64,000 nucleotides of DNA, from assembly GCA_047495785.1 (NCBI GenBank), contig JBLDXI010000033.1, forward strand, positions 1,364,001-1,428,000, read 5' to 3'. This DNA is from Lepidodermella squamata (Eukaryota; Animalia; Gastrotricha). Below the pieces are notes generated by a model, which saw only the letters and a program-made list of their open reading frames with translations, had not been told where the DNA came from and searched no databases. The position numbers and the translations under genes were made by a program. Within the stretch, counting starts at the first letter, position 1, and each line of letters begins with the position of its first letter. Shown in pieces: positions 8,545 through 34,821 of this stretch.

Positions 8545-9022
8545 ATCCTAATGACGGCAAGGATTGTGACAATAATTGCCATTTCGTTTGAACATTATAT
8601 CATGCTGTTTTTGAAACCTTCAACTTCATCTGATATTTCAAAAATAATTTAGAAAGCTGCAAATAAACTACTATATTATTCTGCTTGATAGTTGCTTGAT
8701 TGCTCGCCAAGATGAGTATGACGCGGAAAGTCTCACGAATGCTATATAACAAGTTTTCTAATTAAAAAATAGTTGCTAAACTTCTGGGACACGTTGTAAT
8801 AATAGTACTAAATTTTTTTACGGCAATTCACAGAAATATTTGACCTCTCGACATCAGCCAATCGGGTTGTAGCGCTAAGTAATAAGAGCCAGACTAAGAT
8901 CGACTAAAAATTTCATTAACAATAATTTCAGAATTTTTTATCAAGGAAACTCCGCTATGATTAATGAGGTTTTAGCAAGTGTTTTTTCTCTTTTCAGCCT
9001 GAGCTGCGGAAAATCATTCTAG

Positions 9023-9520: not shown

Positions 9521-11876
9521 GAAGTAATGAGGACCAGCTCCAAAACCGAAGCGCAGAAAGATTTTCGAGTCAAAAACCGAAAAATCCACTGCTTTTAACA
9601 AGATTGCGTTATATTTTACTTCCTTGATAATAACGTGACAGTAATTCCTCCACCTTAGTAAGGATATCTGGGTTATTTTACCGGCAGCAAAATTTTTCTG
9701 ACTAGTTCGAATTTTAGAATTTTACTCCAGAATTTGGACTAATTCGGAAAATCGTGAAAATTGACGATGAGGTGGCCATAGTTACCCAAAAAAACTGTTT
9801 ATGAACACTATTCAAATGAGTTAATTGCTTCCGCGATCAAGTTCTAAGTGCTAATGTCTTCCAATGTATGAAATCACCCTCGTTTGAATAACGTCCTGTT
9901 TTCGGTTAAAAAAATAAACAGTATTACCTGTGATAAAATACCTGTGACAATAAAAATTTTGTTTATTGAAATTATCGTCGTTTTACCGTTGAATTTCGTT
10001 GAAAAAACGGCCGAAATCAGCGGCGAAGAGCAGTAATGGGAGCATTTGATTTAATTTCGAAAAGCTGAAATAATGCGGATGAAATTGCGGCCACCAATTT
10101 CAAGTCAGTAATTCATAGGCTTGAAAACTTGGGCATGAACTTGACATTTCATGATCATGGAATAAGTTTCGTAACTTATTTTTAAAACAAGGGTATTTTC
10201 ACGTTACAACATAATTAATCCAAATCACTCGGGGTTTGTGATATTAGATTTTGAAATTGGGTTCAGTCATGATCGAATGCTTCAATGTTCTTAAATTTCC
10301 TTCAGCGCAACGAAATCACGGTGGCCAAAAAGATACGCTAGGGGCGAAATTCATTGACTGGAGTGCGCATCAATTTAATCAGGAACTTTAAGCAATGGAA
10401 AAGAATTTCAACCGTTTTGGTCAATCGTCATTCGTCGTCGAAATCTTCATGCTCTCCGGCTGGTCAAAGCATCAGTGGCCACGACTCATGGAACAGAGCG
10501 CCGATATCAAGCCCCAATATCATCAGTTGCCTCCATGAAGCCACTCAAATCGGTTCTAGCTGGGTTCGCGCAGAAATCAAGGCTTCTACATCCCGGCATT
10601 TGGAGGACTGGCAACAATAGAAGCCATCCGCTCGCTGCAAAATGGTATCCAGGTCGCTGCGGAAATTAATCATGGATTGTGGTCAATTTTGCCGGTCGAA
10701 GACTCGCCGAGAAACCAGTTATTGTCGCCTCTAACGTTGCTATGCCTATTCGCTGAATTTCGGTTGCTGTTCAAAACCGCGAATTCGGAGGGAAAACCGG
10801 ATCGGCACCTGCGCGCGCGTGTGAGCCAGAGCACGGCGGGACAATGCGCGCGTGTGTCCATTGTTGTCGATTAGGAACCCGCCGTACCTCGGTCGACACC
10901 TACGAGCCGAAGCCCGACAAATGTGTTTGATGAGAGAGATTGCAGGCCCGTCGCATCCCGGTCGCCCTGAGCCACGTGGAAATCGACTGTGGCCCCGTCG
11001 GGGTCTGGTCGACCAGACCGCGATGTGGTCGCTTTCGGGCTTGGGTCGTAACATAGCCAGAGATATTTACAAAGTACTTATAAATCATGCTTTCTACCAT
11101 TAATCGATATTAAGTAACACTTCCATACGCTTGTGTGTCTCAACAGTCCGTCGCAAATTATTTGACCAAATATTTCCCCATCAATCCATGTTCAATTAAA
11201 TTTCAACAGGCATGCTCTGCGATTATGACCTACTTATAAATCATGCACTCGCCCATTAATCGATAGTAAATTGGGAGTAACACTGCCAGATGCTAGCTTG
11301 TCCAACCGTCCGTCGCAACTTATTTGACCAAATTTTTCCCCACCAATCCATGTGTAGCCGTTTATGCTCTAGCAGCAGTTTTTTGTCTCATTTTTTGCCA
11401 TTTTTTCATGTACTTTTGCGTGTCCAACAGTCCGTCGCAGATTATTTGACCAAATTTTTCCCCACCAATCCATGCGTAGCCGGTTATGCTCTAGCAGCAG
11501 CTTTCTGTCAACGACCACTTATTTCACCACGCGTGAGCCAAGAAAAATATAAAATTTAACCCACTTCTTGTCGGTCAACAGCTATATAAGTCACCGGCAA
11601 TCCACTGTCTAAGCCAGCATCCTATTTTTCAGATCAAGCTTTATCATTAGTTTACGTTAAATTTTGAAATAGCAGCCCGGTCTTATATAATTTCAATTCT
11701 CCGAAAATGGGCTACTATTCAAAATAGGCCTCTGTACAAGATTGATTTATAAATGGCTCTTGCTTTAATCGAAATTTTAAATTAAAAAAAGTAAAATTTA
11801 ACCCGCCTAACCCACTATTTCACTTAGGATCCCATTGGTATTATCGATTATCGAATAATAAAACTTCACAGCCATC

Positions 11877-12995
11877 ATGCCAGCTGTTTCGAAGAAACTC
11901 GTCCTATCTGCTCAGTCGAAAGATCTGACCGCTGGTCTAAATCTCGAGGAGGAAACCATTCCAGAGCCTAAAACCGGCGAAGCTTTGGTCAAAGTTCTGT
12001 ACTCTCCGATCAATCCGAGCGATATCGGCGTCCTAAATGGAAGACTTGGAGATGGTGCTCTCTTCTCACTGCCAGCAACGCCCGGTTTAGAGGGAGTAGT
12101 CGAAGTGGTCAAGTCACCCAGCGGCGCCTTTCAACCAGGTGATCGGGCCATCATTCAAATATCCCCGGGATGGGGCTACTGGCGCGAGGCTGGCATCGCG
12201 CTGGAAAAAGACCTCATTAAAGTGCCGAAGGAACTGCCAGCCGAAGCTGCTGCTACTCTGATCGTCAATCCATGCACTGCTTACATGTGAGAAAAGCCTA
12301 TAGTGGTATTTTCCGATATAATTTTGAATTTTATAGCATGGTCAAGCACAGTGTCCCACTGAACGCCGGAGATGTGATTATTCAAAACGGCGCGAATTCG
12401 GCTCTTGGAAAAATCGTCATCCAATTAGCCAAAGCCTTTGGTTACAAAACCATCAACGTCGTCCGAGAACGGCCGAACTTGCAAGAGTTGGCCGATGAGC
12501 TGACGAAACTCGGCGCTGATGCTGTCATCACTGACGAGCAGTTGAAGGGCGGCATTTCAAAGCTGAATCTCGGCCTCCCAGCGCCTAAATTAGCTATCGA
12601 ATGTGTTGGTGGCGAAGCTAGCCTGCACCTAGTTGCAGCTTTGGCAGACGGCGGAACTGTGGCCATCTACGCCGCCATGGCCGGCCAGCCTCTTTCTCTG
12701 TCTCAAGCTGACATAGTTCTCCGTGAGATGCGCTTAGCCGGCCTCAACGTTTTCTCGTAAGTTTGGTTTTATTTTGTCTCGTTTTCTAACACAATTATAA
12801 TGAACTTTATTTAGGTGGATCGCCCGCAAGCCTAAGGAGTACCCTGAAGTTGTCAAGGATGTTATTGGTCTTTTCGTGAGCGGAAAATTACAGCTGCCGA
12901 AATTTCGCAAATTTCCTCTCGCCCAGTGGAAAGAAGCTGTCAAGCATGCTGTAACTGGCGTTGTGAACGAGAAGGTTCTCATTCAGTTCAATTGA
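11877..12995 (+). CDS. MECR-like: MECR/ETR-like enoyl reductase, copy 4 (lacks the conserved Tyr after INPSD...G)
   Basis: Same three-exon structure; last exon WIARKPKEYPEVV...KVLIQFN* ends at 12995. Confidence 0.85.
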
Positions 12996-13464
12996 ATCTT
13001 AATGATTTCAAGGACTGTGACAGAAGATGCCCGTTTGTGTGAACATTAAATGCTGTCAGTGATTAAGTTGATCCCTTTTCAATAGAGCTTGGAATTCAGC
13101 TGATTTTTCATAAAGAATTTAGGAAGCTCCAAATATATTACCATGATATTCATTGTGACTTGTGACGTTAATTAAAAGGACTTCGAGACTTGTTTGTGCT
13201 TGGGTTCAACTTGGGTTCAAGTCTTGACATTGGGTTCAACTATCAAATGTTTGCAACAAAGTACTAGTCAACGCGAGACATTTTTCGTCGAGAAATCGTC
13301 CTGTTCGATGATCCGCATATTATTAGCTCATTACGTCGAAGCTTTAGTTACTAATTTTTAGTGATCCCCATTGTTCGGCTAATTTGTCACGGCTCAATTG
13401 AAAATCGATTTCCATGCATGTTCATTTCAAGTTATATCGCCATTTCACCGCAAAATCGTCGGAT

Positions 13465-16136: not shown

Positions 16137-16206
16137 GTTAGGTTTAGGTTTAAGGCTAGGGTTAGGGTTAGGGTTAGGGTTAGGGTTAGGGTTAGGGTTA
16201 GGGTTA
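16137..16206 (+). repeat. Interstitial telomeric-type (TTAGGG)n tract
   Basis: About 7 perfect TTAGGG units plus degenerate flanking units. Confidence 0.9.
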
Positions 16207-16300
16207 AAGGATGGGTCTTAATATTGGGGAGGAATAATTTGGCAATGAATTCACTATACCCGAAGAAAATTATCCTACAAAATACACATTTATATTTAGA

Positions 16301-18265
16301 ATGGGTCTCAATTTGTTACTAATATTTTTGGTACCGGCCTGTTTCGCCAACGAGGTAAGCAACCTTTACTCGAGGAAGTTTACCACTGGTTGCGATGCCA
16401 GCAATGAAGGGTGAGAATGGTTGCTGATTTTTTTTATTTTTTTTTAATTAATTTTTTTCAGCAATGTTTTCTATCTCACTTTTATGAGCAACATCCCGGA
16501 TCAGCCGAAGAATGTTCCCGTTGAAATTTTCGTGGCAACAGCCGCCGACAGCGCGTCCGTGACTCTTGAAACCGCAGCCGGCCGTGTCGATACGAAAACC
16601 GTTACCCGGGGCCAAATCGTCCGGTTCCAGGTCCCGCGTGAGGTTGCTGTTCTAACAGACACCGGCAAGTCGTCGCGAGCTCGCGTTGTCAAGGTCACCT
16701 CCGACCAAAAAATTGTAGTATACGGCGCCAATAAGGAGCACTACACCACCGATGCTTTCCTGGCCCTGCCTGAGACCGTCATTGGAACTCAGTACTACGC
16801 CGTCACGTGGTTCCCCCCGGTTAACTACGCCAAGCCCGATTACTGTGAAATCGCCATTGCCGCGGGCAAAGAGCAGGCTGTTGTTGAGATCACCCTGCCT
16901 CAAATCACCGGTGGCCAGTCAGGCGGTCGGGGATACCGCCCGGCTGATGCTGTCGCGACCTCGCCACTGCCCTTCATCCCACCAGAGCAGCCAGCTGTCC
17001 CGGCTCAGTTGCCGCCGCACGAACCCGAAACCCCGCTCGACTACCCACCACCTGGCGCGGATACCGTCCCATACCCGCACCGACCAGTTCCGGATAACGG
17101 CGGATATCCATTCAGCAACCAGCGCCTCGAGGATCCTCTGAACATCTACGCCGCTTATATGCCACCACCATACCCGGGCAATAACGAGGACACCGATGGC
17201 TACTACGTCCCAACGCCCATCCCTCACCCTGTTGATGCCGACCCTAGCGAAAGCATTGCTTGCAACGTCGAAATCGACGGCCGCGTGTACCGCAACGGCG
17301 ACACTATCACCGTGCAACTCCAGGCATTGGAAGCTCTTCAAATTCAGGCTAAATGCGATTTGACAGGTGCCTACATCAAGTCAACGCGTCCGATCGCCGT
17401 TTTCAGCGGAAACGCTCGTACCGCTATTGGCCCGGGCGCCATCACCCGTGATCATTTAGTCGAGCAGATCCCGCCAGTACCAACCTGGGGACGCACCTTC
17501 GTCACCCACCCAACCCCACGCCGCACTGTTGGTGATTACTTCAAGATCATCGCGGCTGAGGATGGTACTGAGATCACCGTCTCGCCGAGTGGTCGCCTCG
17601 TTAAGGCGGCTATCACCGACCGCCAGCAGCGCACGTTGAACGCTGGTCAACAATGGCAATTGGACGTTCCATCCCAGAGCTACCTCCACATTGTCGCGAC
17701 TAAGCCCATTTTGGTCGTGCAATTCGTGAAATCTCAGACAATTGGCACCGAACCAGCTGACCCGGCCATGAGCCTGGTTATGCCCATCGAGCAGTTCGGC
17801 CTCGGTTACACCTTCAACACCGTCGAGGGTGTCGCGACTACGTACCAAAATTTCATGACTGTTGCCGTTCATCGCGGTAAAGAGCACACCCTGGTGTTGG
17901 ACGGTGTCCCGGTTCAACCGGCTGAGGGTTGGTCCGAGGTGGCTGGTAGCAATGTGACGGTTGGCTACCTTAGCATCCACCCGGGTACGCACACCATTTC
18001 GAGCCAGAACGGTGACACCCGCTTTGCCACTTACATCTACGGTGCCGGCGATCGCGAGAGCTACGCATATCCTACCGGAATGTGCCTCAAGCTTTTGGTA
18101 AAATTTAATTTAATTTTTTAAAATTAAAAAAATTTTAAGGAGGGTTTTTTAGAATTTTCAAATTTTTCAATTAATTTTAATTAATTTAATTTTAATTTTT
18201 AGGAATGCCCGTCGACTCCTGGCTGCTGCTGCCAACGCTGCGAACGTGGCCTCGGTCTGTTCTGA
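16301..18265 (+). CDS. Secreted IgGFc-binding-protein N-terminal-domain protein, head 1 plus short Cys-rich tail
   Basis: Signal peptide MGLNLLLIFLVPACFA; exons 16301-16410, 16462-18097, 18203-18265. Motifs TDAFLALP, DLTGA.I.S..PIAVFSG, DHLVEQIPP..TWG, ADPAM, ESYAYP.G; Pro-rich insert; tail ECPSTPGCCCQRCERGLGLF*. Confidence 0.85.
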
Positions 18266-19126
18266 AAGCCTTATCGATACCTTTCGGCAATTCAGAGATG
18301 AGAAAAGAAAATGAAAAAAAAATCAGTGCTGTGAGATGATCAAAATCACCGTTTCGATCCTGTGCATTTCTTTATAATTTATTATTTTTCTAACCATAGC
18401 CTTGTATTTTTTGTCGAATATCGTGACCCTAGTTTTATTTACTATCGCGAATTTCTCACATTTTGCCGCAAAGTAAAAAAGGATGCTGCCACGTGATGGG
18501 TTCATTCTGATTCAACACTTAGCCATTTATTGTTATTTGCGGATATAAACCGCAGAATGTTTCAATCAGAGCATGACTGAGGCTTTGAGGCACGATTTTT
18601 CCCAGATGTGCACTCGTCTCCTGTTCCGGCTGGTTGATATAGCGTAAACACTGAGGCGTAGGCTTACCTAAATATTTTTCGTCATTCACGCCAAAAATTA
18701 TCATTTTTGCGCCACATACCTGCGATATATGAGGCCGGCTAATATATAATATGAAACACGGCCGCAGAATAAAAAAAAGTAAGCGTGGGAAAAACTACTC
18801 ATATCCTATATCTGGAGATGTCATGGCGGTAAATCGAGCAACCACCTTAATTTACAATTTCGGCTAATTTACCTGATGCTGATGGCAAAGTCCACCCGCG
18901 TCCGCTGTTGATTTTGTGCACACGCACTAATTTACATGTGTCAACACATCAACGACATCTTGTCACATCCGGTATATTGCACGTCAAATCTTAATGCAAC
19001 ACCGGAGACACATGAACTTCCTTAGCAACAGCTTGATTTGCGGTTCCGTTGCTAAGGACGCTAATTCTATTTTTTCAATTTTTTATTCCGAAATTCTCAA
19101 TTTTTCAGATTATTTTTGTATAATAA

Positions 19127-20634
19127 ATGTTGTTGGGCTTGTTAATCGCTTTTACCTGCTTTGGGAGGGCCGTTTTCAGCCAGCAAAGTCAGCCGAAAGC
19201 ACCCGAGCGTGACGATTGTAAGCAGTTGTCAAATTACGGCAATTCGTTTCATTTCACGGTTCTCGACACGGATGACGCTGTTAACCAGGCCATGGAACCG
19301 GCCCGACTCACCCTGGTACCAGCCCGGCAGACAGGTTCGACTCATCTGTCAATCAGAGCCGGGGCGTTTGCGCAAGATGGCGACTTTTCAAACTCGCCCG
19401 AACAGCAGGAAATACCGATGATGGCTCAAACCCGGCAACAGAGTGCAGTTGCGACCGGGCGATTCGAATTCGCAGTATGTAGCAAGTTCCAACAGGGTGC
19501 GACAGCCAATGCAACCGGAAAGGCTTGTATTGTCACGGAAAAGGCCGTCCGGGTCCAGACTAACCAGCCGGTAGCCGCTGCGGTGAGCCAGGGCGATGAG
19601 TCATACACTTTGATTCCTGATTCAGCGGCTGGGCAGGAATATATTGTGGCCGGTTGGTTCCCACCAACGAATCCATCGAATGCAATCAAGTCTGATTTTT
19701 TAATTTTCATTAATTTTTCAAAAATTTACTTATTTTCAGGCAAAATGTGTTGGCTATTGTGGCTATCATGGAAAATACAACAGTCACAATTTCTCTACCC
19801 TCCGACCCAACTTGGACGTGTCAAATCACATTCGGCACGGGTACTTATAGAGCCGGCGACAAATTTGACCTTGACCTAGAACGCGACAATAGCCTCATCG
19901 TGCAGGCTCAATGCGATTTGACCGGAGTTTTGGTCACCGCGACTCGGCCTTTCGCGGTTTTTTCGTCAATCAACCGCAACCAGGTTGGCTCGTCAACAGC
20001 CCGGTCTGTCATGCAGCTACCGCCTACGGCTGCCTGGGGCAAGCAACATGTAGCCTTCAAAACGCCTAGTTTGCCGAATTCGAACGAGCAGTTGGTTGAT
20101 ACTTGGAAAATTGTCGCTGGTTTAAACGATACTCAGGTCGTTCTATTTCATTCCGACACTCAGTCAAGCGAGACGCTGAACATAAAAGCGCGAAGTTGCT
20201 ACTCAATGTCGTTGAAAGAAGAAAAATGGGTTGAAATAACGTCCAATTACCCGGTTTTAGTTGTTCAAATCATCATGTCACGTGACGGAGCCACGCCGCA
20301 AGACGCCATTGTCCATACACCTGTCGAGCAATTTAAAACGCGAATGATGATGCCTCGTTATCTGTTATGGCCTCATAATTTGACGCTGGCAATCGTCCGG
20401 AAACAATCGCAAAGTTCGGCCCTGGCGATGAATGATGTCCCGTTAGCGATAGGCGAGTGGTCCCCTCAGCCTAATTTGGGCACCCAGGTGGCTGCTGTGC
20501 CCCTATCAACAGGGCTGGTATCGTCGTTTTTGAAGCTAAATTCACCGAGTGCCGCCTTTTCAGCCTACGTTGTAGAACGTTTCGATGGAAATAATGTTCG
20601 GATTTTTTCGGGCGGAACTTGCTACGACCAACTC
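19127..20634 (+). CDS. Divergent IgGFc-binding-domain head 2 (ends on a phase-0 donor; 3' partner exon not adjacent)
   Basis: Signal peptide MLLGLLIAFTCFGRAVFS; WFPP, QAQCDLTG.LV.ATRPFAVFS, QLPP..AWG, PVLVVQ. Intron at ~19690-19739; ends GTCYDQL|GTAAGT at 20635. Confidence 0.75.
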
Positions 20635-21420
20635 GTAAGTATTTATTAATAATTTATTTTCTAAATTTATCTGTTAATTTTGACTGGGTAACTTGTGCGC
20701 TCTATTTATTTTCTCGGCTTTTGAGACGTTTGAAGTTCCGACCGGAAACAGTCTCAAGAATGTGCGAGACATAGGGCTCGATGACCCAGTTTTTGTTATT
20801 GCGCGGGTCGATATTCGCCGAGTGGTATCTATAGATGAAAAGCGGTAAATAATGTGACTTGAGTCATCGGAACGATACAAAACCGATCGTTTTGTAGCGC
20901 GTGTTGGATGAGAAACCGAAACAAGAGGCGTGTTTGCTTAGCGCACTCGGCCGGCCACCTGCGCGCCTTGGCGCCGACGACGTCGTTCCAACGACGCGGC
21001 GAACATATTTACCCGGCATAGCTAGACGCTAATAACAACAATGACAATAAGACCAACGGCAAACACGGCGAAAATAGCGCGTTAAATTAATCAATGCTTT
21101 ATACTATACGACGACGGTGATGACTGTTATTTACTCGGTAATTAATAACCGCAACAGATAAGTGTAGTAGTACGACCACACCCTCTCGAGCCAACTACCT
21201 ACCTGGTTGGCGACAGCGCGCGGGAAACAACTTTCATTTCACCATTTCCCATATCGCAATAAAACTTGTTTATTAGCTTTTTGTTCCGCGCCGCAAAATC
21301 ATTGTTTTTTCTCCACAAAAATCAAGAGCCGTAAATAAACGTTGTTAGCAAACAACAACAACACCAAAACCCGGCCTCCAATCTGTTTCATCTCATTTAT
21401 TATCCATTAATGTAGCGAAA

Positions 21421-22986
21421 ATGAGACACCTATACGTATCCACCTTAATTATTTTAAAAATCGCGCTAATTAACCCAAGTCGCGCAACTACAACGGGTTG
21501 CGAAATCAGCAATGAGGGGTATGGTTATAATTATGATTTTTGATAACCGATAAATTAATCAAAAATTAGCAACGAGTACTACTTGACATTCATGACAAAT
21601 TTCGCGCAACAACCGCATAATGTCCCGATCGAAATTTTTGTCACCACCTTCGCTGATATGGCCACCGTTACGGTAGAATCGCTAGCTGGGATCGAACGAA
21701 AAACAGTCTCCCACAACGCAATCATAACGTTTCAGCTACCAAGGCAATACGTGGTGCTTCATAATACCGGGAAAACGTCTCGAGGCCGGGCGGTTCGCAT
21801 TACTTCTGACCAGAAAATCGTCGTTTATGGCGCGAATAAGGAGACATATACTACGGACGCGTTTCTCGCCTTACCTGGAAACGCGATTGGTCAGCAGTAT
21901 TACGCAATTTCTTGGTTCCCGCCGACCTATTTCTGCGAACTAGCCATCGCGGCGACGAGTAATAAAACTCAGGTCGAGATCACCCTGCCTAAAGAATCGC
22001 AACAAGCTGCTCCGAAATCGACTCTCGTCCCGAAACGAGCTGTGAACCAGAGGCAAATGCGTATTTTGAAAAATTTGACTGGCATCGATCCGGATCAACT
22101 AATCGATGACCCTGAGAGCCAGTTCTACGTACCACAGCCGGACAATATACCAGCTCCCTATATACCATGTGAGGTCGAGCATGACGGTCGGGTGTATCGC
22201 AGTGGAGACACCCTGTTGGTGACGATGAATGAAATGGACGCTTTGCAAGTTCAGGCGAAATGCGACCTGACCGGCACGTTGATTAAGGCGGATAAGCCGA
22301 TTTCAGTCTTCAGCGGTAACGACCGAACAGCGATTGGCCCGGGTGCAATCACGCGTGACCATCTAGTCGAGCAGCTGCCACCAATCAGCGCTTGGGGTCG
22401 TAATTTCGTAACAACGCCCATCCCACGTCGGACAATTGGCGACTATTGGAAATTGATTGCGGCTGAAAACGACACGACTGTCACGGTATCTGGGCTGAAT
22501 GTCGATGAGGATAGCCGTGTTTTGGCAGCTGGCCAAAATTGGCTACTCGATTTAGGATCCTCGTCCCACGCGTTCATCTCAGCCTCTAAGCCAATCATGG
22601 TCGCTCAATTCGTGAAGAGCCAACAGGAGGGCAGTGAAGACGCCGACCCAGCTATGTTGATCGCAAACCCCCTGGAACAGTTCGGTCTCGGCTACACGTT
22701 TTCGACTGTTGAAGGCGTTGCGAATCCTTACAAAATCAATTTCATGATGATTGCGGTGGAAAAGGGCAAGGAGTCTGATTTGCTGCTCGACGGCGCTAGG
22801 TTCGAGCCGGCCGAGTCGTGGACTGAAGTTCCATTGTCTAATGTAACGGCTGGTTACATCGTCCTGGAGCCGGGTACTCACACGATCGGGAGCCAAAATG
22901 GAAACGCGCATTTTGCGACCTACATTTACGGGGCGGGAGATCGCGAGAGCTATGCGTACCCTACAGGAACTTGCCAACATGTCCTC
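21421..22986 (+). CDS. IgGFc-binding-domain head 3
   Basis: Signal-peptide exon 21421-21518, intron to 21569, long exon ending ESYAYPTGTCQHVL|GTAAGT (donor 22987, phase 0). Clearly paralogous to head 1. Confidence 0.85.
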
Positions 22987-23264
22987 GTAAGTATTATTAA
23001 ACGCACAAGTTACCCAGTTGGTTATTTAATTACTTAATTAATTACACGTAAAAAGCGTTGGACGTCCTTTAAAATCGAAAGTTCTCGAGTTTTTTTTGCA
23101 CGATTTTTTTTCGAGTTGAGTTTTGTGCTACTCAAGTTGAGGCTGACGAAAGATCTTTCATTTTGGAGGGCGTCCTCGCTTGTAATGTGGAAATGCCCTC
23201 TAAAGTGCGGATTTTTCCGAAGCTAAAACTGTGCTTTTTTCATCAACCTCCTTAAAAATTGAAG

Positions 23265-25611
23265 AATTGCCTGCCGAGTTTTATGGAACCGCTCGACGGC
23301 AGAGACAACGACTGTGATGGCAGCATCGATGAGGAAATTTGCGATGATAAGGACGATGATGGCGATGGCCTGATCGATGAAGACTGCGGTGCTGCAACGC
23401 CTATCCAAGGGCCGTCAAAAATAGGTAAATGACAAAATTTCGAATTTTTTAATCTTAAATTCGAAATTTCAAGAAATGCGAAGAACTGTTGGCTGCTACA
23501 ACAAAAGAGCTGAGCTCTCCTGCCCAGCCGGGAAAACCATTAAGATAATTTCAGCCCATTATGGTCGGATAGGCTTTGTTGGCGATAATACTTGCCAAAT
23601 CGGTAACACATTCGATTTCAACGGCTTCGAGGTCGACTGCGGATTCAAAGACATTCACTCGAATGTCGCAAGCCAGTGTGACAAACAGCCCAATTGCGCC
23701 GTTACGGTCAACGAGCACGGCCTCGGAAGTGTTTGCAACTCTGGGCCATGCAAGCCATGCAGCCTTTACGCCGATATTCAATACACATGTCTTGGTATGA
23801 AATAATTCTTTATTATAGTCGAAATTATTTGAAATTTTCACGCTCAGATGAACCGCGTTGGAGCTGCTGGCACCCTACTAGTCGAATCTCCTCCACAACC
23901 CCCGAGCATTGGTCTGCGAGCTCAACTGAGAAGAGACCTAGGAGTGAGCAGGGCTGTCTCAGTGGTCGGAACAAGGCCTTCAATAACTCACCATTTGAGC
24001 CGAGAAAATCCGGATGCGAAACGTGTCTTCCTACAACAAATCGGTTATCGACAGCCGCACCATCAGAAGCTTTCTCAGGCCGGCTCGGCGCGTCGAATCT
24101 TGAGTCATGGTGCCCGGCGTTTTGCGACAAAACTCTCCCGTTCCTTCAGGTCGATCTCGGTGGTGATTTTCTCGTAGTCGGATTTTTGATCCAGGGCCAG
24201 CGTTATCTTGACAACTTCGCGACAAGTGTCGCAATTTCCTACAGCCACGACGGCCGTAGCTGGTACGAACTCCGCGAACCAGCCCAGGCGTTGGTCTTCA
24301 AATTCGACGCGAATAACGACCCTAGGACGATTACCGGCTTTCATTTGAATAGCTTGAGCTTCATTGCGAGATATGTCCGCTTTGTTGCGTTGGACAGCGT
24401 TGGGTCACCCTGCATGCACGTCGAGGTCATCCGGTGCAACGAGCGTGTCGAATGTGGGCCGTTGCAAATCGCCAATTCAGACGCGTTGAACAAAGCTGGG
24501 CAGATAGATCAAATCCTTCGCGTTAGCTGTTTGTCAAATTTCGAAACGCCCGATGGCTTGAAGGCGTTTGAGGTCATCTGCGAGCGGGCCGAGGGCGGCG
24601 CCGGGTTGCCGGTCTGGGGTGGTAAACGCGAGTGTTCGGTCGCTAAATCTTGCGCATTCATCCCGGCCGTTCAAGATGCGCTTCATGACGCGGTGAATGT
24701 CAAACTTGGAACGAAGGTCAATTACACGTGTAATCCTGGGTTCACCCGATTTGGGCCGGAAACTGTAACGTGTGGCCCGGATGGACATTGGTCTCAAATC
24801 CCGTTCTGTGAGTTACTAATTTAATTCAAAAACTTCTTGAAATTCAATTTTTTTTTTATATTTTTATTTTAAATTTAAATTTAAATTTAAAATGTTCAAG
24901 ATTTCAAAAAATGGTTCAATTCATTTGTTAAAATTCCAGGCTGTAATCAATCTGAGCAGATACAAGGCCGCTGTTATAAGCTGTCGAAGATTCAACTTCC
25001 TTACGATGAAGCCGTTATCGAGTGTAAAATGCGGGGTGGCCAACTTGCTGAACCCACCGACCCAGCCGCGCTTTCTCAACTAGCCTCGCTCATTCGCCCG
25101 AGACGCGATATTGGCAACCGGCCTGTTTGGCTCGGTTTCACCGATCGATTCAGCGAGGGCCGATTCGTTTTCGAATCTTCCCAAATGGAAGCCACTCTGC
25201 CTTTCGCTGGAGGGTTCGCTAAACTTGAAATATTTCAAATAGAAACACCACCTTAAATATTACTATTTTTGCGATTTTTTAAGGTCACCTTCAAGCTCGG
25301 GCTATGAAAATTGTCTCACTCTTGAGTCGCGATCAAGCTTCACTCTGGCTGATTCAAGTTGCTCGAATTCGCTCTATTTTTTCTGTAGCTACAGCACTGA
25401 ACCAGCTGAAGAATTCTCGAACTTTGGCCGAGTTCCCGATCGCGATCCAACTGAATCATCAGGCTCAGGAGCCGAACAGCCTCAATCTACCTCATCTACC
25501 TCAGAAACGACCCAACCGGCCGAAACGACAACCGAAATTCAGCCGCCGACTTCGCGTTCAATTGCTGAATTTCTCGCTGATTTCGCGACAGCGATGGCTC
25601 GACGTCATTGA
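23265..25611 (+). CDS. Tail module A: DGxDNDCDGxIDE repeats, SUEL/rhamnose-type lectin, F5/8 type C (discoidin), CCP/sushi, C-type lectin, Ser/Thr-rich end
   Basis: Exons 23265-23424, 23474-23794, 23848-24807, 24940-25213, 25284-25611 join in frame at GT-AG sites. Motifs LSCP...I.I.SAHYGR, SWCP...LQVDL, ARYVR, CNPGF..G...C...G.WS, CY...A...C..GGQLA...VWLG.TD...EG.F. Confidence 0.8.
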
Positions 25612-26041
25612 AAATTGCCAGAGAAATACGAAAAATAATTACCTTGAACTAGTTTGCTGTCTATGCTTCTTTTTATCCTAAAAATACGATCTTCCTATAT
25701 AGGTATACATAGAGTCGAATAATTCTTCCTCTATTTCGACATCTCAGCATTCTTCCTATAGTTGAATACAGCTTCCGCAAAATTCCACCCCCTAATTTTT
25801 GATGACAATCATTTTACTCGTGAGTATCGTGCATTTTTTGTTGGTTTTCTATTCAGTATTTGCAATGTCTTGAAATAAAAATTTGAAAATATCGCAGCAA
25901 TAAAACGCAGAAAAATTTAATAATAATACGCGTTGTAAAGGACGTCCAACATATACCTATATAAATATAATTAAATTAACCAAATGAGTACTTTGTGAGT
26001 AAAAATTGAAATAATTGCATATATATATATTTTTAATTTAG

Positions 26042-28456
26042 AATTGCCAACCGGGCTTCATGATTCCAAACGACGGCAAAGACAACGACTGTGACGGTCG
26101 AATCGACGAGGAAATCTGCGGCGATGGATTGGGTAAGGCTATAAAAATTCGATAAAACCATTTTTCAAAATTGCTAATCTTAGACAATGATGGCGATGGG
26201 AAAATTGACGAAGACTGTGGAAGCACCTTCCAACCATCGACCGAGAAAAGATATGTCCTGCCCCGAATTCAAATCTGCTTCGGCGACCGGGCTGTTCTCG
26301 CATGCAACGCCTCGGCTGGGCAACGAATCCGTATTGTCCAGGCTCATTTCGGCCGAGCCGGTTATCCAGGTGAAGACTCATGCCGATCCGCCAACCCGAT
26401 TTCATGCTCAGGCGAAGAAGCTGACTGCGGCTGGCGAACGGTTCGCGATCACATCGGAACGATTTGCAACACTCGGGAAAAGTGCGAGCTTAAAGTCGAC
26501 TCAGCTTTCGTCTCAGCCTGCCCCCTCGACGCGACGTGCCCGCTCTGCGCTCAATACCTCGAAGTCATCTACATGTGCTCTACCGAACCAGCCGATTGCC
26601 AATACCTGGCGACCGATGCTGAATTTTCGTTCTCAGACGGCTACTACGGCGTTGAGGGTGGTAACGCTGGGGAGCTTTCGAGCTGCGCCTCAGCTCGAGA
26701 GTTCGATCAACTTGACAGTAACGCTATTCAATATTCAATGCTGCGCCGCGAACAGCCGACATGTGATGGCGGGTGTATCCAGAAGCAAGTTGGCGCGTCT
26801 CAAAAATTGGGCGAGAAAGTTTGCGCGGCTTCTTCGGCTTGCATGGACATGGATGGGTTGCCGAGTTGGTGCCCGGAACGGTGCCAACTAGCCCGACCTT
26901 ACCTCCAAATTGACTTGAAAGGTAAAATGACCTAACGTCAATTGAAGCCTTGAGAATTTAATCTCAAATTTAAATTTATTTTCCTAATTTTAATTTTTAA
27001 TAATTTTTAATCAATTTTTCAATTTATAATTATTGATAATTAATTTTTTAAGCTTCGAGCTTAAAAATCGAGGCCAAGATGAAATGCCTGGACGGCGTGA
27101 TCGTTCCAACCGTGATGTTCGGGTCCGAAGGATGGGCGATGACTCGTGAAGAAGAAAGAAGGCTAGATGTCTGCCAGATGAAATGGCTCAGGAACATTAC
27201 CGGAATTAGGCTGGCTGATAGGGTCCGAAATGAAACAATTAGAAAAAAATGTAATACGCAAAAATTATCAACAAAGGTCGCTAGGAATCAATTAAGATGG
27301 TACGGACACGTAGAACGCAGAGACTCGGAATCGCTATTGAAGCAGGTTAGGTATTGGGACCCCCCGGACGATTCGTGGCAAAGACCCCAGGGCCGTCCCA
27401 AACTGCGCTACTCAGACTGCATGAGAAGGCAGTTGAAGAAAATTAATATTGAGAATTGGGAGGACGCCGCTGTATTAGCTCAGAATAGAATTGAGTGGCG
27501 TACGAAATTGAAAAATATCACAGATTGATTTTTGAATAATGAATTCATTTCGCTCATTTTTCAAACAAAAATATCGAATTTTTCATCATTTTCAATACAC
27601 TTTGATTTTGGCTTGACTTAGGATCGACTAACGTTGGTCCTCCTCCGACACTCGGTATGGTTGGAGGAACACCATCATCCTTCAGCCATACCGGGTACAC
27701 CGGAGTGAATTTTATTTCGTTATGTGTACAGGTTTCCTTTTTTGTCTTTTTGCTCTAAACGAAATAAAGAAGATGTAATGTAATGTAATTTTTTAATTAT
27801 TCAATTTTAATTTATTTTCAGGAAAGTTCCGGATTAAAGCCGTAATTATGCAAGGTCGCCGAAACTGGGACCACTGGGTGACCTCAGTGACCTTCGCCTA
27901 TAGCTCCGACGGGGTTCAATGGACGGATAAGCTTGACCCCTACGGCGTAATCCAGGAGTACAAGGCCAACGAAAACCCATTCGACGCTGTTGTGTGGGCT
28001 TTCAACAACGGCGAATTCGAAGCTCGGTACCTTCGAGTGAATGTTCGAGAATGGTACGGCTACCCTGCGTTGAACCTTGAGGTAGTTCGATGCGCGGCAG
28101 CGCTCAGCTGTCCCGCGATTTCGGTCATGAATTCGAACATCCAAAGCGAGCCGGCTCTTTTCGGCCAGCAATTGGAGGTTCAATGCAACCGGCTATGGAT
28201 GACACCTAGTGGCGAGATTTCCTACAAACTAACGTGCCGGACGGATGGGGCGTGGGACTGCGGGGCTAGGCCATGTTCGGAATTGCGAACTTGCGGCGAT
28301 ATTCCAGCTGTGACCGGGGCGTTGCATAATGCGAGAAATATGCTTGTCGGATCGCTGGTAAGCTACGTTTGCCAGGGTGGTCGCCAAATTCAGGGCAACG
28401 CTACCGTCATCTGTCAGCCGAGTCGCGAATGGTCAGCTCCACCTAAATGTGTCTAA
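26042..28456 (+). CDS. Tail module B: DGxDNDCDGxIDE repeats, SUEL lectin, F5/8 type C, CCP/sushi; no start or signal exon of its own
   Basis: Begins ttttag|AAT TGC (phase 0, like module A); exons 26042-26132, 26184-26921, 27822-28456. No upstream coding exon seen between 25611 and 26041. Confidence 0.8.
27052..27785 (+). mobile_element. 5'-truncated non-LTR retrotransposon (RTE-like) in an intron of module B
   Basis: ORF 27079-27528 matches the post-RT C-terminus of RTE-type LINEs (P..MFGSE.W, LR.I.G....D.V.NE.IR, LRWYGHVER, RP.GRP..R..D, A..R..WR). (TGTAA)n tail; 11-bp direct repeat TAATTTTTTAA at 27041-27051 and 27786-27796. Confidence 0.9.
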
Positions 28457-29095
28457 AAATCGAATCTCAAAAACAATTATTACTCCAAGCATGGATAAAT
28501 AGTAAATTAATTGAAATTTGGTGAATTAATAAACAAAATTGTAAAGGAACGAGGTGATGAAACTCGAAATCCATTTTATAAACTAATTATACATGTGCTT
28601 TTATGAAATTTATCATCATAAAAACCTATTATTTTTCTGCTCACTGTTGTTATGATGGAAAATCATTCCATTAATTATCGTGCCTCTAGCAATTCTGATT
28701 GTACATAGCAAAAATTTATTGCGGGTAATAAAAATCGAATCGAGTAATTAGCGTTAATATTCAAGACAATTTCGGTCAATAACAAGATAATAACATTGAT
28801 AGTTTTTTGATGAGGTCAAAAGCGCACTAGAAGATGCAAGTGCGCTTGTAAACAATGCGGCCTTAAATGCCCGATAATCCGCAGCCATTTCCTTCACTCA
28901 TCCCCTCGAGCTAGGTGCCTAAACGTTTGTTGATATTATTTATGACACTTGGTTTTGCGCTTTATACGTGTGCTTTATACGTCTAAATTATACAAATATT
29001 TGCGAAAATTAACAGATTTTTATATTAGAGCAATATACAATAGCTGTTGTTTTTTACAAGTGATTACCTCTTCACGGTGTTATAACACAAAGGAA

Positions 29096-30416: not shown

Positions 30417-32379
30417 CTACTTCGATTTGACGAGCATCGCGGCAGATTGGTACTGGAGTTTGAAACTGAAAAAAATTAAATAAATTTGTAATTAAAAAAG
30501 TATAATAGCTGTGGTCATAATTTACTCTGCTCCTTCGTTGCCAGTAGGATGTTCTTCGCTTTTCAAAATTTCACCGATTGCAGCGCGGCGCCAGTCGCTT
30601 ACGAACCGAACAGGGCCTTATCGCAAAACTTTGATTAAATTTCATGATTTTCGATTCAGGCAAAAATTTACCTTCGGCTCTGCCTCCTTCTCCATATCTG
30701 CTGTAGCTGTAAAGCGCCAAAGAGCAAAGCAGCTTGGTTCCTAATTCTTTTTTCAGCTGGGCCACAACAGGGTTGATTTCTGAAGCGCTGGCTGCTTGGT
30801 CACGTGCGACCTCATCACGGTCATCTTCATAATCTCGATCTTCGTCTTCGTCGTAATATTCATCATCCTCATCTTCTTCTTCGTAGTAGCGTTGCCGATA
30901 GAATCCTCCGCTGTAGAATCCTCTCTGCTTCTTTTTATTCTTCTTAGATGACCCTTCGAATAATGTGATCTGACGTGAAAATTGAGTTAAAAATAGACGA
31001 ATAGGATTTGAGAGCAATACCTTTAATTCTGTTTGATACTCCTGATCAAAACATTCGCGAAGGTAGACATCGGCAGATTCAGCAGCATCGTCATCTCCAG
31101 CTTTGCCTTCAGCTGCCACCTCAATCGGAACAAGCTCGATCTTGAATTTACCACTCGAGGCAAAAGCTTCATAGGCGATTCGATCGGCTCCTTTTAGAAG
31201 ATCGGGCTTTAGCGACAACGGAGCGTAAATGTGCTGTAAAATGAAGCCAACTCGCCTTTTTCGACTCTTCTTCCATTCTTCGAGATTGAATAGGTGATGC
31301 AGAAGATTTGTTAGTTTTTGGTGGGCAGGAGCAAGCGAAGCTGGAATGGTTGGTTTGCCCTCCTTGCCTTGGAAAATCAGATTGTAGGTCAACGCGACTC
31401 GATAGCCAGACTTCAATGGTTTGACCTCATGTTCGCAATCAGAGAAAAATGAGACAGCACGGCATCTACAAATTTCACGATTTTACTGAAATTTAGAAAA
31501 AATCGAATTGATTTACTTCAAAACGCTTTTCGCGAGATCTGGGTCAGAATAGGAAAAAGTGTAGTTCCTATCAGTTCCTTCGTGCCGAACGACCAATTCT
31601 CCGCCGGTGTAGATGCAAGGCAAAAATACGACAATTGAGCCGAAATGATTCGCCTCACGCTGGGTGTCTCGATGGGCCTTGAAAAACGAACCTTTTTGAT
31701 AAATCAGGAGTTTGTAAAATTTAGCCGAAATCGCCTTGCTTCGAGGCGCGAGTTGTTCTTGGATAGATTTCAGCAACGGGCTTTTTGTTGAATCGCTGAA
31801 TAGATCAAGCCACTCCTGGCTGTTGATCGCAACCTTCGAGGCTTCAATTTCCCAGCCATCTCGAACTGTTTTATCCACAACTGTCTTTGTCCCACGGCCG
31901 AAAGGTGCTTGTTTAGCTAGCTCGATCAATTGCTGGCAAGAGGCTTCGTCGCATGGGAATTGAATGTATGAACCGGCGACGGAAATCAAGGGTAACATGT
32001 CGATATCACTCGAGCATGACCACTCATTCTGAGGCAGATCGCCTTTGATGCTTTGCCGATATGAACTTTCGGTGAACTGCTCTTTAGACCCGAAAAATAC
32101 CTCTAAACTGTTAAGGATTTGCTTCTCTGTCATAGGAGGGAGTGGAGGCGCTTCCTATAATACATTTATTCGCAAATTAGTAGATTTATTAGCAAATATA
32201 ATAGTTACTTTTACGGCAGCAGTCGCGCCAGTTTGTTGAGCTTTCGCACTCTTCGCCGGAGCTTTCTTGGCAGCCGGTTTTTTCGCTGTTTTCTTGGCTG
32301 CTGTCGCCCCATTCTCGGCATCATCATCGTCGCCGTCGTCTGGAATAACGATTGCATTTTTCGGCGCGGCTCTCTTCAT
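30417..32379 (-). CDS. 2OG-Fe(II) oxygenase (prolyl-hydroxylase-like fold), copy 1
   Basis: APFG.G..TVVD..VR..WEI, YKLLIY..GSFFKAHRDT (HxD), FFSDCEHEVKP..SGYRVALTYNL (distal H, R), LQH.Y..LKGADR, PTGNEG. GT-AG introns. Confidence 0.85.
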
Positions 32380-32878
32380 TTATCTGCTAGTAAAAAATTG
32401 TATATTGCTAACACGTTATAATTGTTTTTAATTTTTGAAAAATAAAGTGGTTGTGGATGGACGAGAATTTTCGCGCGCGATCATTCTCCAACTCAACAAA
32501 TGACACAAACAGCAGCACGTGATCAAGTCTGCGTTGAAATTTTTTCGATGAGTTAGTCAAACCTTAATTTTTTAATTTTCAATGTTGTCCACGTCCAATG
32601 CCAAGTTCTAGGAATAAATTCTAAAAGATAGATTGCTTCAATTAATTAAAAAAAACCGAAAAGTAAAAAAAAGTAGATCAACAAGTGAAAAAGAAAGAAA
32701 TTTTGATGGATCGGATTTTTTGCGTGCAAATTTAACCATTTTTTAAATGTAATTATTTCTTTTTATTTTTATTAAATCATCTTCTTCATATTACACAACT
32801 TCATATTGATTCCGCAAAGAATCAAGGTAGAACGATCACAAATCTATGTTAGCATCTGAATGTTGCAATGCCAATTCT

Positions 32879-33283
32879 TCACTTTGGCCTGACAAGCATC
32901 GCCGCCGTTCGGTATTGAAGTTCAAATCTGAATTTGGGGGAAAATTATTTAAAAATGCCCATAAATTCTCAAATATTAGTCTTACTCGGCTCCTTCGTTG
33001 CCAGTAGGACTCTCTTCATGATCAGTAATTTCTCCGATCGCAGATCTACGCCAATCACTCACGAATCTAACAGGACCTTTTCAAAAATAATTAAAAAAAT
33101 TATATGTAATCAACGCTACTATAATCAATTGTTTCATTACCAGTCGGTAGCTCCTCCTCCATTCCTTTCATTCTAAAGGAATTAAGGCTGAAAGTACTCA
33201 GCAACCCATCGTCTAACTCCGATTTGAGTTGCAACGCGGTGAGGTTGACCTGCGATAAATCGGGACCATTGTAGACCCATTCG

Positions 33284-33330
<47 letters not shown>

Positions 33331-34821
33331 GTCGTCGTCGTCGTCTTCGTCTTCATCTTCATCCTCGTCGTATTCGTCGTAGAACGGCTTCTTCGCAGGT
33401 TTTTCTTCTAGCTTCAAGGGCGGCTGATACAGGTGAACCTGGAAAATAGGTATTTCTACAATTTGAACATTTTCCAGTACAAAAGAGTTATTACATCCAT
33501 TTGAGTCTCATATTCTTGTTCGAAGCACTCGCGAAGGTAAACGTCGGCAGTTTCCGATGCCTCGTCATCGCCAGCTTGTCCCGTCGCAGAAACTTCAATC
33601 GGAACTAGCTCGATTTTGTACTTCCCGCTCGAGGCAAACGCTTCATACGCAATCCGATCCGCCCCTTTCAAAAGATCCGACTTCAGCGACAGCGGAGCGT
33701 AAATGTGCTGTAAAACAAGCCCGATTCGCTTTTTACGATCATTTTTCCATTCGTCGAGGCTGAACAGCTGCCCGAGGAGGTTATTCAGATGTTCGTGGGC
33801 GGTGGTGATTGATGGTGGCGGCGTCGGTTTCTTGCCCCTGTCAGAAAAGAACAGGTTGTAGGTCAACGCGACTCGATAACCAGACTCCAGTGGTTTGACC
33901 TCGTGCTCGCAATCAGAAAAAAACGCGACAGAGTGGCATCTATAATAATTGAATAATGATAAACTGCGAAATTCATAGCCGAAAATGGCTTACTTCAGGA
34001 CACCCTCGGCAAGTTCTGAGCTCGAGTAAGAAAACGAGTAGCTTCTTTCGACCCCCTCATGTCGGACAAGTAATTCACCACCCGAGTAAAAACTAGGCAA
34101 AAACACGACAATCGACCCGAAATGGTTCGCCTGGCGTTGGGTATCACGATGAGCCTTGAAGAACGATCCCTTTTCATAGATCAGCAGCTTGTAGAGCTTT
34201 GCCGAAATCGTCTTCGAACGGGGCGCGAGTTGCTCTTGAATCGATTGTAGAAGACTGCTAGTCGCAGAGTTGTCGAAAAGCTCGCGCCAGGCTTTGCTTT
34301 TGATCGAAATTTTCGAGGCTTCAATTTCCCAGCCGTCACGAACTGCCTTGTCCAGGACTGTCTGAGTGCCGAGGCCGAAGGGCGCTTGCTTCGCGTGTTC
34401 TATCAGCTGTCGGCACGTGTGTTCATCACATGGAAATTGAATGGTTGACCCGCCGACGGAGATAAGTGGCAAAATGTCGATGTCACTCGAAAATGACCAC
34501 TCGTTCTGCGGCAGAACTGCTTTGATGCTTTTCCGGTAGGACGATTCGTAATCGTATTCTTTAACACCGAGGGCAGCTTGTAAATTCTTGATAATCTCAC
34601 TCTCGGTCAAAACAACAGGAGGCTGGTTCTTTTAAAGAAGGAAATTAAATGAAATTAAATGTCAAAAATTGAAGCAAACAAACCGTTGGAGTTTCGTTGG
34701 CTTCGATCATTTTCTTTGATTTAGCGGCGGTTGAATCTTTCGCGTTCTCGTCGTGCTTATTTTCGCGACTATCGTCGTCTGGGATGACGATTGGCTCATT
34801 ATTAGGCGCGCCTCTTTTCAT
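32879..34821 (-). CDS. 2OG-Fe(II) oxygenase, copy 2, with poly-Asp tract
   Basis: Paralog of copy 1 with the same motifs and intron positions; start MKRGAPNNEPIVIPDD. Confidence 0.85.
33281..33345 (-). repeat. Coding trinucleotide repeat (GAC/GAT)n encoding about 21 Asp
   Basis: (TCA)n/(TCG)n run on the + strand, in frame in ORF 33100-33417. Confidence 0.9.

What the first reader, a model, noticed from the sequence alone, without database searches (positions are those of the whole stretch)
20683..23018. Exact 17-nt long-range complementarity between the introns after head 2 and head 3 (selector 1 / docking site)
Seen: ACTGGGTAACTTGTGCG (20683-20699, 48 nt after donor 2) is the exact reverse complement of CGCACAAGTTACCCAGT (23002-23018, 15 nt after donor 3), extendable by about three G-U pairs. 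Both are mixed-composition islands in AT-rich intron sequence. Inference: in a head-2 pre-mRNA this duplex would loop out all of head 3 (~2.3 kb) and bring donor 2 to the position of donor 3. Established analogy: docking-site/selector pairing in Drosophila Dscam1.
Basis: partly seen in the sequence, partly recalled or inferred. Interest (0 to 1): 0.88.

Follow-up and report, generated by a model that had tools for sequence, protein, structure and literature searches.

The report
Intron RNA bridge skipping a nested gene
Two short stretches in neighbouring introns of a secreted-lectin gene cluster pair perfectly and probably fold the RNA so that one gene "head" is spliced across a whole inner gene; a related animal has an equivalent pairing made of quite different letters, but no RNA reads could be checked.

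Summary
ACTGGGTAACTTGTGCG (20683-20699, 48 nt into the intron after head 2) is the exact reverse complement of 23002-23018 (15 nt into the intron after head 3). Three G-U pairs extend it. No other copy with 3 or fewer mismatches lies in the 64 kb, and no shuffle reached its score.

It is one of a set of pairings. The segment after donor 3 (D, 23001-23077) also pairs with S2 (25929-26000). S2 lies just after tail A's poly(A) signals and 41 nt before the acceptor of a second tail, B. S1 and S2 compete for the same 17 nt.

The only sampled relative (metagenome contigs, about 60-64% protein identity, same head2-head3-tailA-tailB order) has unalignable introns. Yet its longest exact inverted repeat is a 20-mer. 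One arm lies 54 nt after donor 2 and the other 78 nt before acceptor B. A second, weaker partner of that site lies about 50 nt after donor 3.

I read this as docking/selector-type competing RNA pairing, as in mite sDscam and fly PGRP-LC. It loops out head 3, or the whole nested head3-tailA gene.

Genome-wide copy number is also untested. This is a new member of a known kind, in a new phylum. The scan had noted the D:S2 duplex and the head x tail layout on this same window.

The parts
19127..20634 (+). Head 2: start codon with signal peptide, exon 19127-19689, 50-nt intron, exon 19740-20634 (IgGFc_binding domain). It ends in a phase-0 donor.
   Evidence: Pfam PF17517 E=5.7e-32. An AG lies 18 nt before the ATG.
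20635..20640 (+). Donor 2 (GTAAGT), phase 0.
   Evidence: The same GTAAGT follows the same codons in the relative.
20680..20699 (+). S1: the 17-mer arm (20683-20699) plus three G-U-pairing bases. It is the 5' arm of the bridge, 48 nt into the intron.
21421..22986 (+). Head 3: exon 1 21421-21518 (start codon, signal peptide), 51-nt intron, exon 2 21570-22986 (IgGFc_binding). The S1:Da duplex loops it out.
   Evidence: The exon 2 acceptor is phase 2, so donor 2 joined to it runs into a stop.
22987..22992 (+). Donor 3 (GTAAGT), phase 0.
23002..23021 (+). Da: the 3' arm of the 17-mer duplex (23002-23018) plus three G-U bases, 15 nt into the intron. Also part of the imperfect helix with S2a.
23057..23077 (+). 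Db: second sub-site of the hub segment. It is an exact 15-mer (23057-23071) complementary to 25936-25950, and extends to about 20 bp.
   Evidence: (-27.7 kcal/mol).
23265..23424 (+). First exon of tail A (starts AATTGCC; DNDCDG metal-binding-like motif). Acceptor A is phase 0.
   Evidence: Orthologous exon in L001 at 6154.
25609..25904 (+). End of tail A: stop codon at 25609-25611 and AATAAA at 25874 and 25899.
25929..26000 (+). S2: partner of D just after tail A's poly(A) signals and 41 nt before acceptor B. S2b 25936-25950 is exact. S2a 25968-26000 is imperfect and holds a 12/17 same-sense copy of the S1 17-mer.
   Evidence: (whole D:S2 -46.1 kcal/mol; 0 of 200 shuffles).
26042..26132 (+). 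First exon of tail B (paralog of the tail A first exon). Acceptor B is phase 0.
   Evidence: Orthologous exon in L001 at 8589.

Best explanation
The 17-nt complementarity is one helix of a set of long-range intronic RNA pairings. These decide which head donor meets which tail acceptor. The locus holds a complete inner gene (head 3 + tail A) between head 2 and tail B.

In a pre-mRNA that contains head 2, S1 (48 nt after donor 2) pairs with Da (15 nt after donor 3). This closes a 2.3-kb loop around head 3 and hides head 3's acceptors, which would give out-of-frame or truncated products. It puts donor 2 about 290 nt, by effective distance, from acceptor A.

S1 displaces only the 17-20 nt part of the D:S2 duplex. 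The rest of D:S2 can still form, giving a three-way junction that also loops out tail A. Donor 2 then lies roughly 110 nt from acceptor B.

In a pre-mRNA that starts at head 3 there is no S1. The full D:S2 duplex forms and leaves about 56 nt between donor 3 and acceptor B, the normal intron size here.

Shown: the helices, their significance, their positions, their competition for the same bases, and an equivalent arrangement in a relative. Inferred: that head 2 is spliced to tail A or B, and that the pairings affect splicing.
For: (1) Non-random: (0 of 200 shuffles; analytic expectation for an exact 17-mer between the two introns is about 1e-5).

(2) Anatomy: heads 2 and 3 each have their own start codon and signal peptide and a phase-0 GTAAGT donor. 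Tails A and B each start with a phase-0 AATTGCC exon. Tail A has its own stop and AATAAA. Head 2 has no tail of its own and tail B no head.

(3) Both arms lie next to splice sites, and Da has a second partner S2 that ends 41 nt before acceptor B. The residual 15+41 = 56 nt matches the 48-51-nt introns of this locus.

(4) Folding three 136-161-nt segments joined by A12 linkers gives S1:Da together with the rest of D:S2 (pair probabilities 0.999 and 1.0). Without S1 the full D:S2 forms.

(5) The relative L001-L003 has the same gene order and clear A-A and B-B orthology, with introns that do not align. Its longest exact inverted repeat in 13.6 kb is a 20-mer, 54 nt after donor 2 and 78 nt before acceptor B (-44 kcal/mol). 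Only two places in that locus pair with the pre-B segment at score 32 or more: that site, and one 51 nt after donor 3 (2 of 200 shuffles).

(6) About 17-19 polymorphic events among the relative's contigs fall in these introns, and none in the arms (p about 0.08, weak).

(7) Run X1, guessed to be RNA, holds 54% of head 2's words but 18% of the 5.6-kb stretch. This hints that head 2 is expressed.

(8) The layout matches the tested mite sDscam system, where selectors lie 43 +/- 10 nt after each variable 5' splice site and the docking site lies before the constant exon (PMC9258826). It also matches fly PGRP-LC 3' cassettes (PMC6191721).
Against: Only one relative could be found, so base-by-base covariation cannot be counted.

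The wiring differs between the species. In the relative, head 2's intron pairs directly with the pre-B site. In the window it pairs with head 3's selector.

In the relative, the pairing of the site after donor 3 with head 2's intron (score 37) is within the noise of GC-rich sequence.

Other 15-18-nt inverted repeats in the window are transposon ends, so a mutational source of such repeats exists in this genome.

Head-only IgGFc_binding proteins of about 450 aa are common elsewhere, so head 2 could be a stand-alone gene.
Confidence: 0.6

Rival explanations
1. A neutral relic. A small local inverted duplication or template switch copied about 17-70 nt between neighbouring introns, and the pairing has no role in splicing. 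This includes the case that head 2 is a stand-alone gene and no RNA spans both arms.
For: D and S2 align over about 70-85 nt with gaps, as diverged inverted copies would. S1 is a 12/17 same-sense match of S2a. Short-range inverted repeats are over-represented in this window. There is no transcript evidence. Head-only proteins exist in other animals.
Against: Neutral intron sequence has turned over completely between the two species. Even so, each has an exact 17-20-nt pairing whose 5' arm is about 50 nt after donor 2, and a competing partner next to donor 3 or acceptor B. The arms sit at splice-site-proximal positions and leave normal effective intron lengths. The donor after head 2 is conserved while the read-through stop is not.
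Confidence: 0.25
2. The arms are terminal inverted repeats of a DNA transposon that spans 20683-23018.
For: Transposon-like elements with 15-18-bp terminal repeats occur in the same window. Examples are a 377-bp element with TA duplication at 54968-55344 and an element at 2263-3680.
Against: There is no target-site duplication beyond a 2-nt TG. No other copy lies in the window. The interior is head 3, a host gene found at the same place in the relative, where the 17-mer is absent. There is no transposase.
Confidence: 0.04
3. The two arms are sites for a sequence-specific DNA-binding protein in convergent orientation around head 3, such as an insulator or loop anchor, and not an RNA helix.
For: Inverted orientation flanking a gene unit. 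Db/S2b has a palindromic GGACGTCC core.
Against: 17 of 17 identity is far more than a binding motif needs. The relative keeps complementarity but not sequence, the opposite of what a protein site predicts.
Confidence: 0.04
4. Chance, or an assembly artefact of amplified DNA.
For: The probable source genome was built from multiple-displacement-amplified DNA, which makes inverted chimeras (PMC11660948).
Against: The expectation is about 1e-5 for the two introns and 0.08 for the whole window at 3 or fewer mismatches. Amplification chimeras are kilobase-scale inversions, not 17-nt islands. The analogous 20-mer pair is present in three independent metagenome assemblies, and the left arm in a fourth.
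Confidence: 0.02

Closest known systems
Docking-site/selector pairing at the 5' variable cassettes of mite (Tetranychus) sDscam-beta (Hou et al. 2022, PMC9258826)
   Same: Alternative 5' cassettes each have their own start and donor. A selector lies a few tens of nt after each donor: 43 +/- 10 nt in the mite, against 48 nt here and 54 and 51 nt in the relative. A docking site before the shared acceptor shortens a multi-kb intron to about 120 nt (132 nt in the relative). Selectors compete for one site.
   Different: The gene family (IgGFc-binding/lectin) and the phylum differ. There are only two or three heads. In the window, head 2's element pairs with head 3's selector and not with the docking site. 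The tails are also alternative, and one head-tail pair forms a complete nested gene. Nothing has been tested by mutation.
Competing RNA pairings at 3' variable regions: Drosophila PGRP-LC, CG42235, Pip (Pan et al. 2018, PMC6191721)
   Same: An element just after a donor pairs with elements before alternative 3' cassettes that carry their own 3' ends. The pairing brings a distal acceptor close and can mask a nearby 5' splice site.
   Different: Here the distal cassette's partner lies directly after the proximal cassette's poly(A) signals, and the same hub is also bound from the 5' side by another head's intron.
Dscam1 exon 6 docking site/selectors and 14-3-3xi (Graveley 2005; Yang et al. 2011, as cited)
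   Same: Mutually exclusive helices on one shared site choose among duplicated alternatives.
   Different: Those are internal cassette exons with a repressor-release model and a sequence-conserved docking site. Here there are terminal heads and tails, and the sequence has turned over completely between the two species.
Stems that bring the 5' splice site and branch point together in long yeast introns (from my own knowledge: Goguel and Rosbash 1993; Libri et al. 1995)
   Same: A stem shortens the effective intron to the length the splicing machinery handles well. Here that is 56 nt, against local introns of 48-51 nt.
   Different: Those act within one constitutive intron and do not choose between alternatives.

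Membership tests
Docking/selector competing RNA pairing in alternative splicing | Two or more alternative exons or cassettes share a common partner splice site | tested here: inconclusive
   The anatomy fits: phase-0 donors on heads 2 and 3, phase-0 acceptors on tails A and B, head 2 without a tail and tail B without a head, in two species. No spliced transcript was seen.
Docking/selector competing RNA pairing in alternative splicing | Intronic complementary elements close to the splice sites they bring together | tested here: met
   Window: arms 48 nt after donor 2, 15 nt after donor 3 and 41 nt before acceptor B. Relative: 54 nt, 51 nt and 78 nt.
Docking/selector competing RNA pairing in alternative splicing | One site with two or more mutually exclusive partners | tested here: met
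   Window: 23002-23018 pairs with S1 (-34.4) or S2a (-23.5). Relative: 8480-8513 pairs with 3857-3890 (-44) or 5973-5999 (-38.5).
Docking/selector competing RNA pairing in alternative splicing | Pairing conserved in evolution, with compensatory change | tested here: inconclusive
   The topology recurs in the one relative with wholly different sequence. The arms are invariant among that species' contigs. Pair-by-pair covariation cannot be counted without closer relatives.
Docking/selector competing RNA pairing in alternative splicing | Disruptive mutations change isoform choice and compensatory ones restore it | not testable with these tools
   Needs minigenes or genome editing.
DNA transposon with terminal inverted repeats | Target-site duplication flanking the repeats | tested here: not met
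   The flanks share only TG.
DNA transposon with terminal inverted repeats | Multiple copies, or transposon-derived interior | tested here: not met
   No other copy in the window. The interior is a conserved host gene. Genome-wide copy number was not testable.

The most novel reading that the evidence does not exclude
An outer gene (head 2 + tail B) is spliced across a complete, separately expressed paralogous gene (head 3 + tail A) nested in its intron. It does so through a relay three-way RNA junction in which the inner gene's own selector serves as the hub. The same elements also let the inner head reach the outer tail, giving a 2 x 2 set of secreted lectins. The topology has been kept in two gastrotrich lineages while every paired base has been replaced.
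Probability: 0.3. Interest if true: 0.75.

Novelty: new member of a known kind. Interest (0 to 1): 0.62.

Why it matters
Splice-site choice through competing long-range RNA pairing is well proven mainly in arthropod genes (Dscam1, sDscam, PGRP-LC, 14-3-3xi) and a few vertebrate genes. If confirmed here, the mechanism would extend to a spiralian phylum with about 50-nt introns and, by an earlier agent's untested note, spliced-leader trans-splicing. It would also show the mechanism solving a different problem: splicing across a nested gene and combining alternative heads with alternative tails of secreted lectin-like proteins. The two species offer a natural experiment in which pairing is kept while sequence is not. 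The elements are short and few, so the system would suit minigene tests.

Tried and rejected

(2) RNAduplex on whole introns gave meaningless giant structures, and a first permissive alignment score drifted. Both were replaced by a stricter G-U-aware local alignment with shuffles.

(3) The search for closer relatives found little. Head 2 and head 3 protein searches, the exhaustive representative search and a metagenome scan found only one related species, plus distant IgGFc_binding proteins at 46% identity or less.

(4) Plain BLAST for Watson-Crick matches in the relative missed the picture, because I queried only the intron after donor 3.

(5) A predicted helix between donor 2 itself and S2 is no better than shuffles (-16.4 against -14.4 +/- 3.3) and was dropped.

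(6) In the relative, the pairing of the site after donor 3 with the GC-rich part of head 2's intron (score 37; 6 of 200 shuffles) is matched by exonic noise. I do not rely on it.

(7) Rfam found nothing in 18200-29000.

(8) Searches of earlier findings by sequence and by words were blank, which means nothing.

(9) A mini first exon for tail B at the ATG at 25985 was rejected: both possible donors give frameshifts, and there is no signal peptide (read by eye).

Full report
**Observation**

The 17-mer ACTGGGTAACTTGTGCG is at 20683-20699 and its exact reverse complement at 23002-23018.
- With up to three mismatches these are the only matches in the 64-kb window. The expectation is 0.08, and no shuffle gave two.
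- The intron after head 2 starts at 20635 and the one after head 3 at 22987.
- Three G-U pairs extend the helix. The duplex energy is -34.4 kcal/mol.
- A G-U-aware local alignment of the two introns scores 43. Shuffles gave 27 +/- 3, with a maximum of 41 in 200.

**Anatomy of the locus**

There are three IgGFc_binding "heads". Each has its own start codon and signal peptide, and an AG 1-18 nt upstream of the ATG.
- Head 1 (about 16302-18096) is followed by a short private exon with a stop (18207-18272), so it is probably a separate gene.
- Head 2 is 19127-19689 plus 19740-20634.
- Head 3 is 21421-21518 plus 21570-22986.
- Each of the three heads ends in a phase-0 donor; in heads 2 and 3 it reads GTAAGT.

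Tail A starts at 23265 with a phase-0 exon (AATTGCC..., DNDCDG motif). It runs through SUEL lectin, F5/8 type C and sushi domains (Pfam), then a domain I read by eye as a C-type lectin. It has its own stop (25609-25611) and AATAAA signals (25874, 25899). Tail B starts at 26042 with a paralogous phase-0 exon and ends at 28456.

So head 2 has no tail of its own and tail B has no head. Head 3 plus tail A form a complete unit lying between them. Joining donor 2 to either acceptor of head 3 gives a stop within a few codons (read by eye). Head 3 must therefore be skipped for a productive head 2 product. Ordinary introns in this locus are 48-51 nt long.

**The 17-mer is part of a set of pairings**

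The segment after donor 3 (D, 23001-23077) is also complementary to S2 (25929-26000).
- Db/S2b is an exact 15-mer (23057-23071 with 25936-25950; -27.7 kcal/mol).
- Da/S2a is an imperfect 33-nt helix (23001-23032 with 25968-26000; -23.5 kcal/mol).
- Together they give -46.1 kcal/mol, and 0 of 200 shuffles reach the score.
- S2 ends 41 nt before acceptor B. D:S2 would therefore loop out all of tail A and leave 15+41 = 56 nt between donor 3 and acceptor B, the normal intron length.

S1 and S2a compete for the same 17 nt, and S1 is the perfect match. I folded three 136-161-nt segments joined by A12 linkers. With S1 present, the minimum-energy structure holds S1:Da (18 bp) together with the rest of D:S2 (13 + 20 bp), with pair probabilities 0.999 and 1.0. 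This is a three-way junction that would loop out head 3 and tail A at once. Without S1 the full D:S2 forms.

**The relative**

Protein searches found one related species only, in ENA metagenome assemblies. Head 2 is 60% and head 3 is 64% identical.
- Locus L001 has the same order: head 2, head 3, tail A, tail B. The same phase-0 GTAAGT donors and AATTGC acceptors are present. The extra intron in tail B's first exon shows A-A and B-B orthology.
- Its introns do not align with the window's, and the 17-mer is absent.
- Its longest exact inverted repeat in 13.6 kb is a 20-mer. The left arm (3858-3877) is 54 nt after donor 2. The right arm (8491-8510) is 78 nt before acceptor B and about 50 nt after tail A's AATAAA. 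Energy is -44 kcal/mol, and the next-longest exact repeat is 15 nt.
- Both arms are present in three independent assemblies, and the left arm in a fourth, whose contig ends before the right arm.
- Only two places in the whole locus pair with the pre-B segment at score 32 or more: that site, and 5973-5999, which is 51 nt after donor 3 (-38.5 kcal/mol; 2 of 200 shuffles).
- Both use the same bases (8480-8513). This is the plain docking/selector layout: one docking site before the shared acceptor and a selector about 50 nt after each alternative donor.
- About 17-19 polymorphic events fall in these introns among the contigs, and none in the arms. This is weak evidence (p about 0.08).

**Interpretation**

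The sequence has turned over completely between the two species. Yet each keeps an exact 17-20-nt pairing whose 5' arm is about 50 nt after donor 2, plus a competing partner next to donor 3 or acceptor B.
- A protein-binding DNA motif would keep its sequence.
- A neutral relic or old transposon ends would have decayed.
- Chance is excluded.

Selection on RNA pairing is the most economical reading.

The wiring differs between the species. The relative bridges donor 2 directly to the pre-B docking site, with 132 nt of effective intron. The window bridges donor 2 to head 3's selector, and through the remaining D:S2 helices to acceptor B (about 110 nt) or to acceptor A (about 290 nt). The S1:Da helix starts 15 nt from donor 3, so it could also mask that donor, as described for PGRP-LC.

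**What is not shown**

- No transcript was examined. I worked beside those places afterwards.
- The only hint of expression comes from run X1, guessed to be RNA. It holds 54% of head 2's words but 18% of the 5.6-kb stretch.
- Genome-wide copy number of the 17-mer is untested.
- Earlier agents' notes give the organism as probably the gastrotrich Lepidodermella squamata, with spliced-leader trans-splicing. I did not test either point.
- That genome was built from amplified DNA (PMC11660948). A 17-nt island is not the kind of artefact such amplification makes, and the relative's pairing is seen in independent assemblies.

**Rivals**

- A transposon reading fails. There is no target-site duplication, no second copy, and the interior is a conserved host gene.
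- Real transposon-like inverted repeats do occur in the window. One is a 377-bp element with TA duplication inside what would otherwise be a 49-nt intron at 54968-55344. Another lies at 2263-3680. A mutational source of short inverted repeats therefore exists.
- A neutral local inverted duplication remains the main rival (0.25).

**Comparison with known systems**

The closest is the mite sDscam-beta 5' cassette system: selectors 43 +/- 10 nt after each 5' splice site, a docking site before the constant exon, and an effective distance of about 120 nt, tested by compensatory mutations (PMC9258826). Next is the PGRP-LC 3' variable region (PMC6191721).

This locus combines both ideas in a new gene family and phylum. 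In the window it adds a relay through another head's selector. I file it as a probable new member of a known kind. The defining functional tests (isoform evidence, mutations) have not been done.

Noticed in passing
window 54968-55344: An exact 17-nt inverted repeat, flanked by TA on both sides, bounds a 377-bp insert. The surrounding intron has 16 + 33 = 49 nt outside the repeat, the normal intron size. It looks like a Tc1/mariner-type MITE in a short intron. Its ends would also loop the insert out of the RNA.
   Followed up: partly
window 2263-3680: An 18-nt exact inverted repeat bounds about 1.4 kb between copies of a tandem receptor-like gene array (four copies, 766-13051). Inside it a 15-16-nt motif (TCTCTGTCCGTGACG) occurs three times in both orientations. 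Probably a transposon.
   Followed up: no
window 16137-16206: An interstitial run of TTAGGG telomere-type repeats lies about 100 nt upstream of head 1's start codon.
   Followed up: no
window 19101-19108, 21410-21415, about 16295-16300: Each head has a pyrimidine-rich AG acceptor 1-18 nt before its ATG. This would fit spliced-leader trans-splicing, which earlier agents reported for this genome. Not tested here.
   Followed up: no
window 20685-20693, 25996-26003, 23006-23016: S1 contains a 5'-splice-site-like GG|GTAACT. S2 contains GTGAGTAA 46 nt before acceptor B. The Da arm (AGTTACCCAG) resembles the 5' end of U1 snRNA (from my own knowledge). The relative's arms do not share this, so it may be coincidence.
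   Followed up: partly
window 23060-23067 and 25940-25947: The exact 15-mer Db/S2b has a palindromic GGACGTCC core, which could also self-pair or be a protein-binding site.
   Followed up: no
window 27079-27528: A fragment of a LINE-type reverse transcriptase C-terminal region lies inside a roughly 900-nt intron of tail B.
   Followed up: no
L005 5447-8152 and L001 204-1346: In the relative, a Cys-loop receptor gene (Neur_chan_LBD, minus strand) lies between the head 1 ortholog and head 2. Head 1 is therefore probably a separate gene there.
   Followed up: partly
window 30571-34610 (minus strand): A tandem pair of paralogous two-exon genes, one with a long acidic D/E run (33276-33372). Function not examined.
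   Followed up: no
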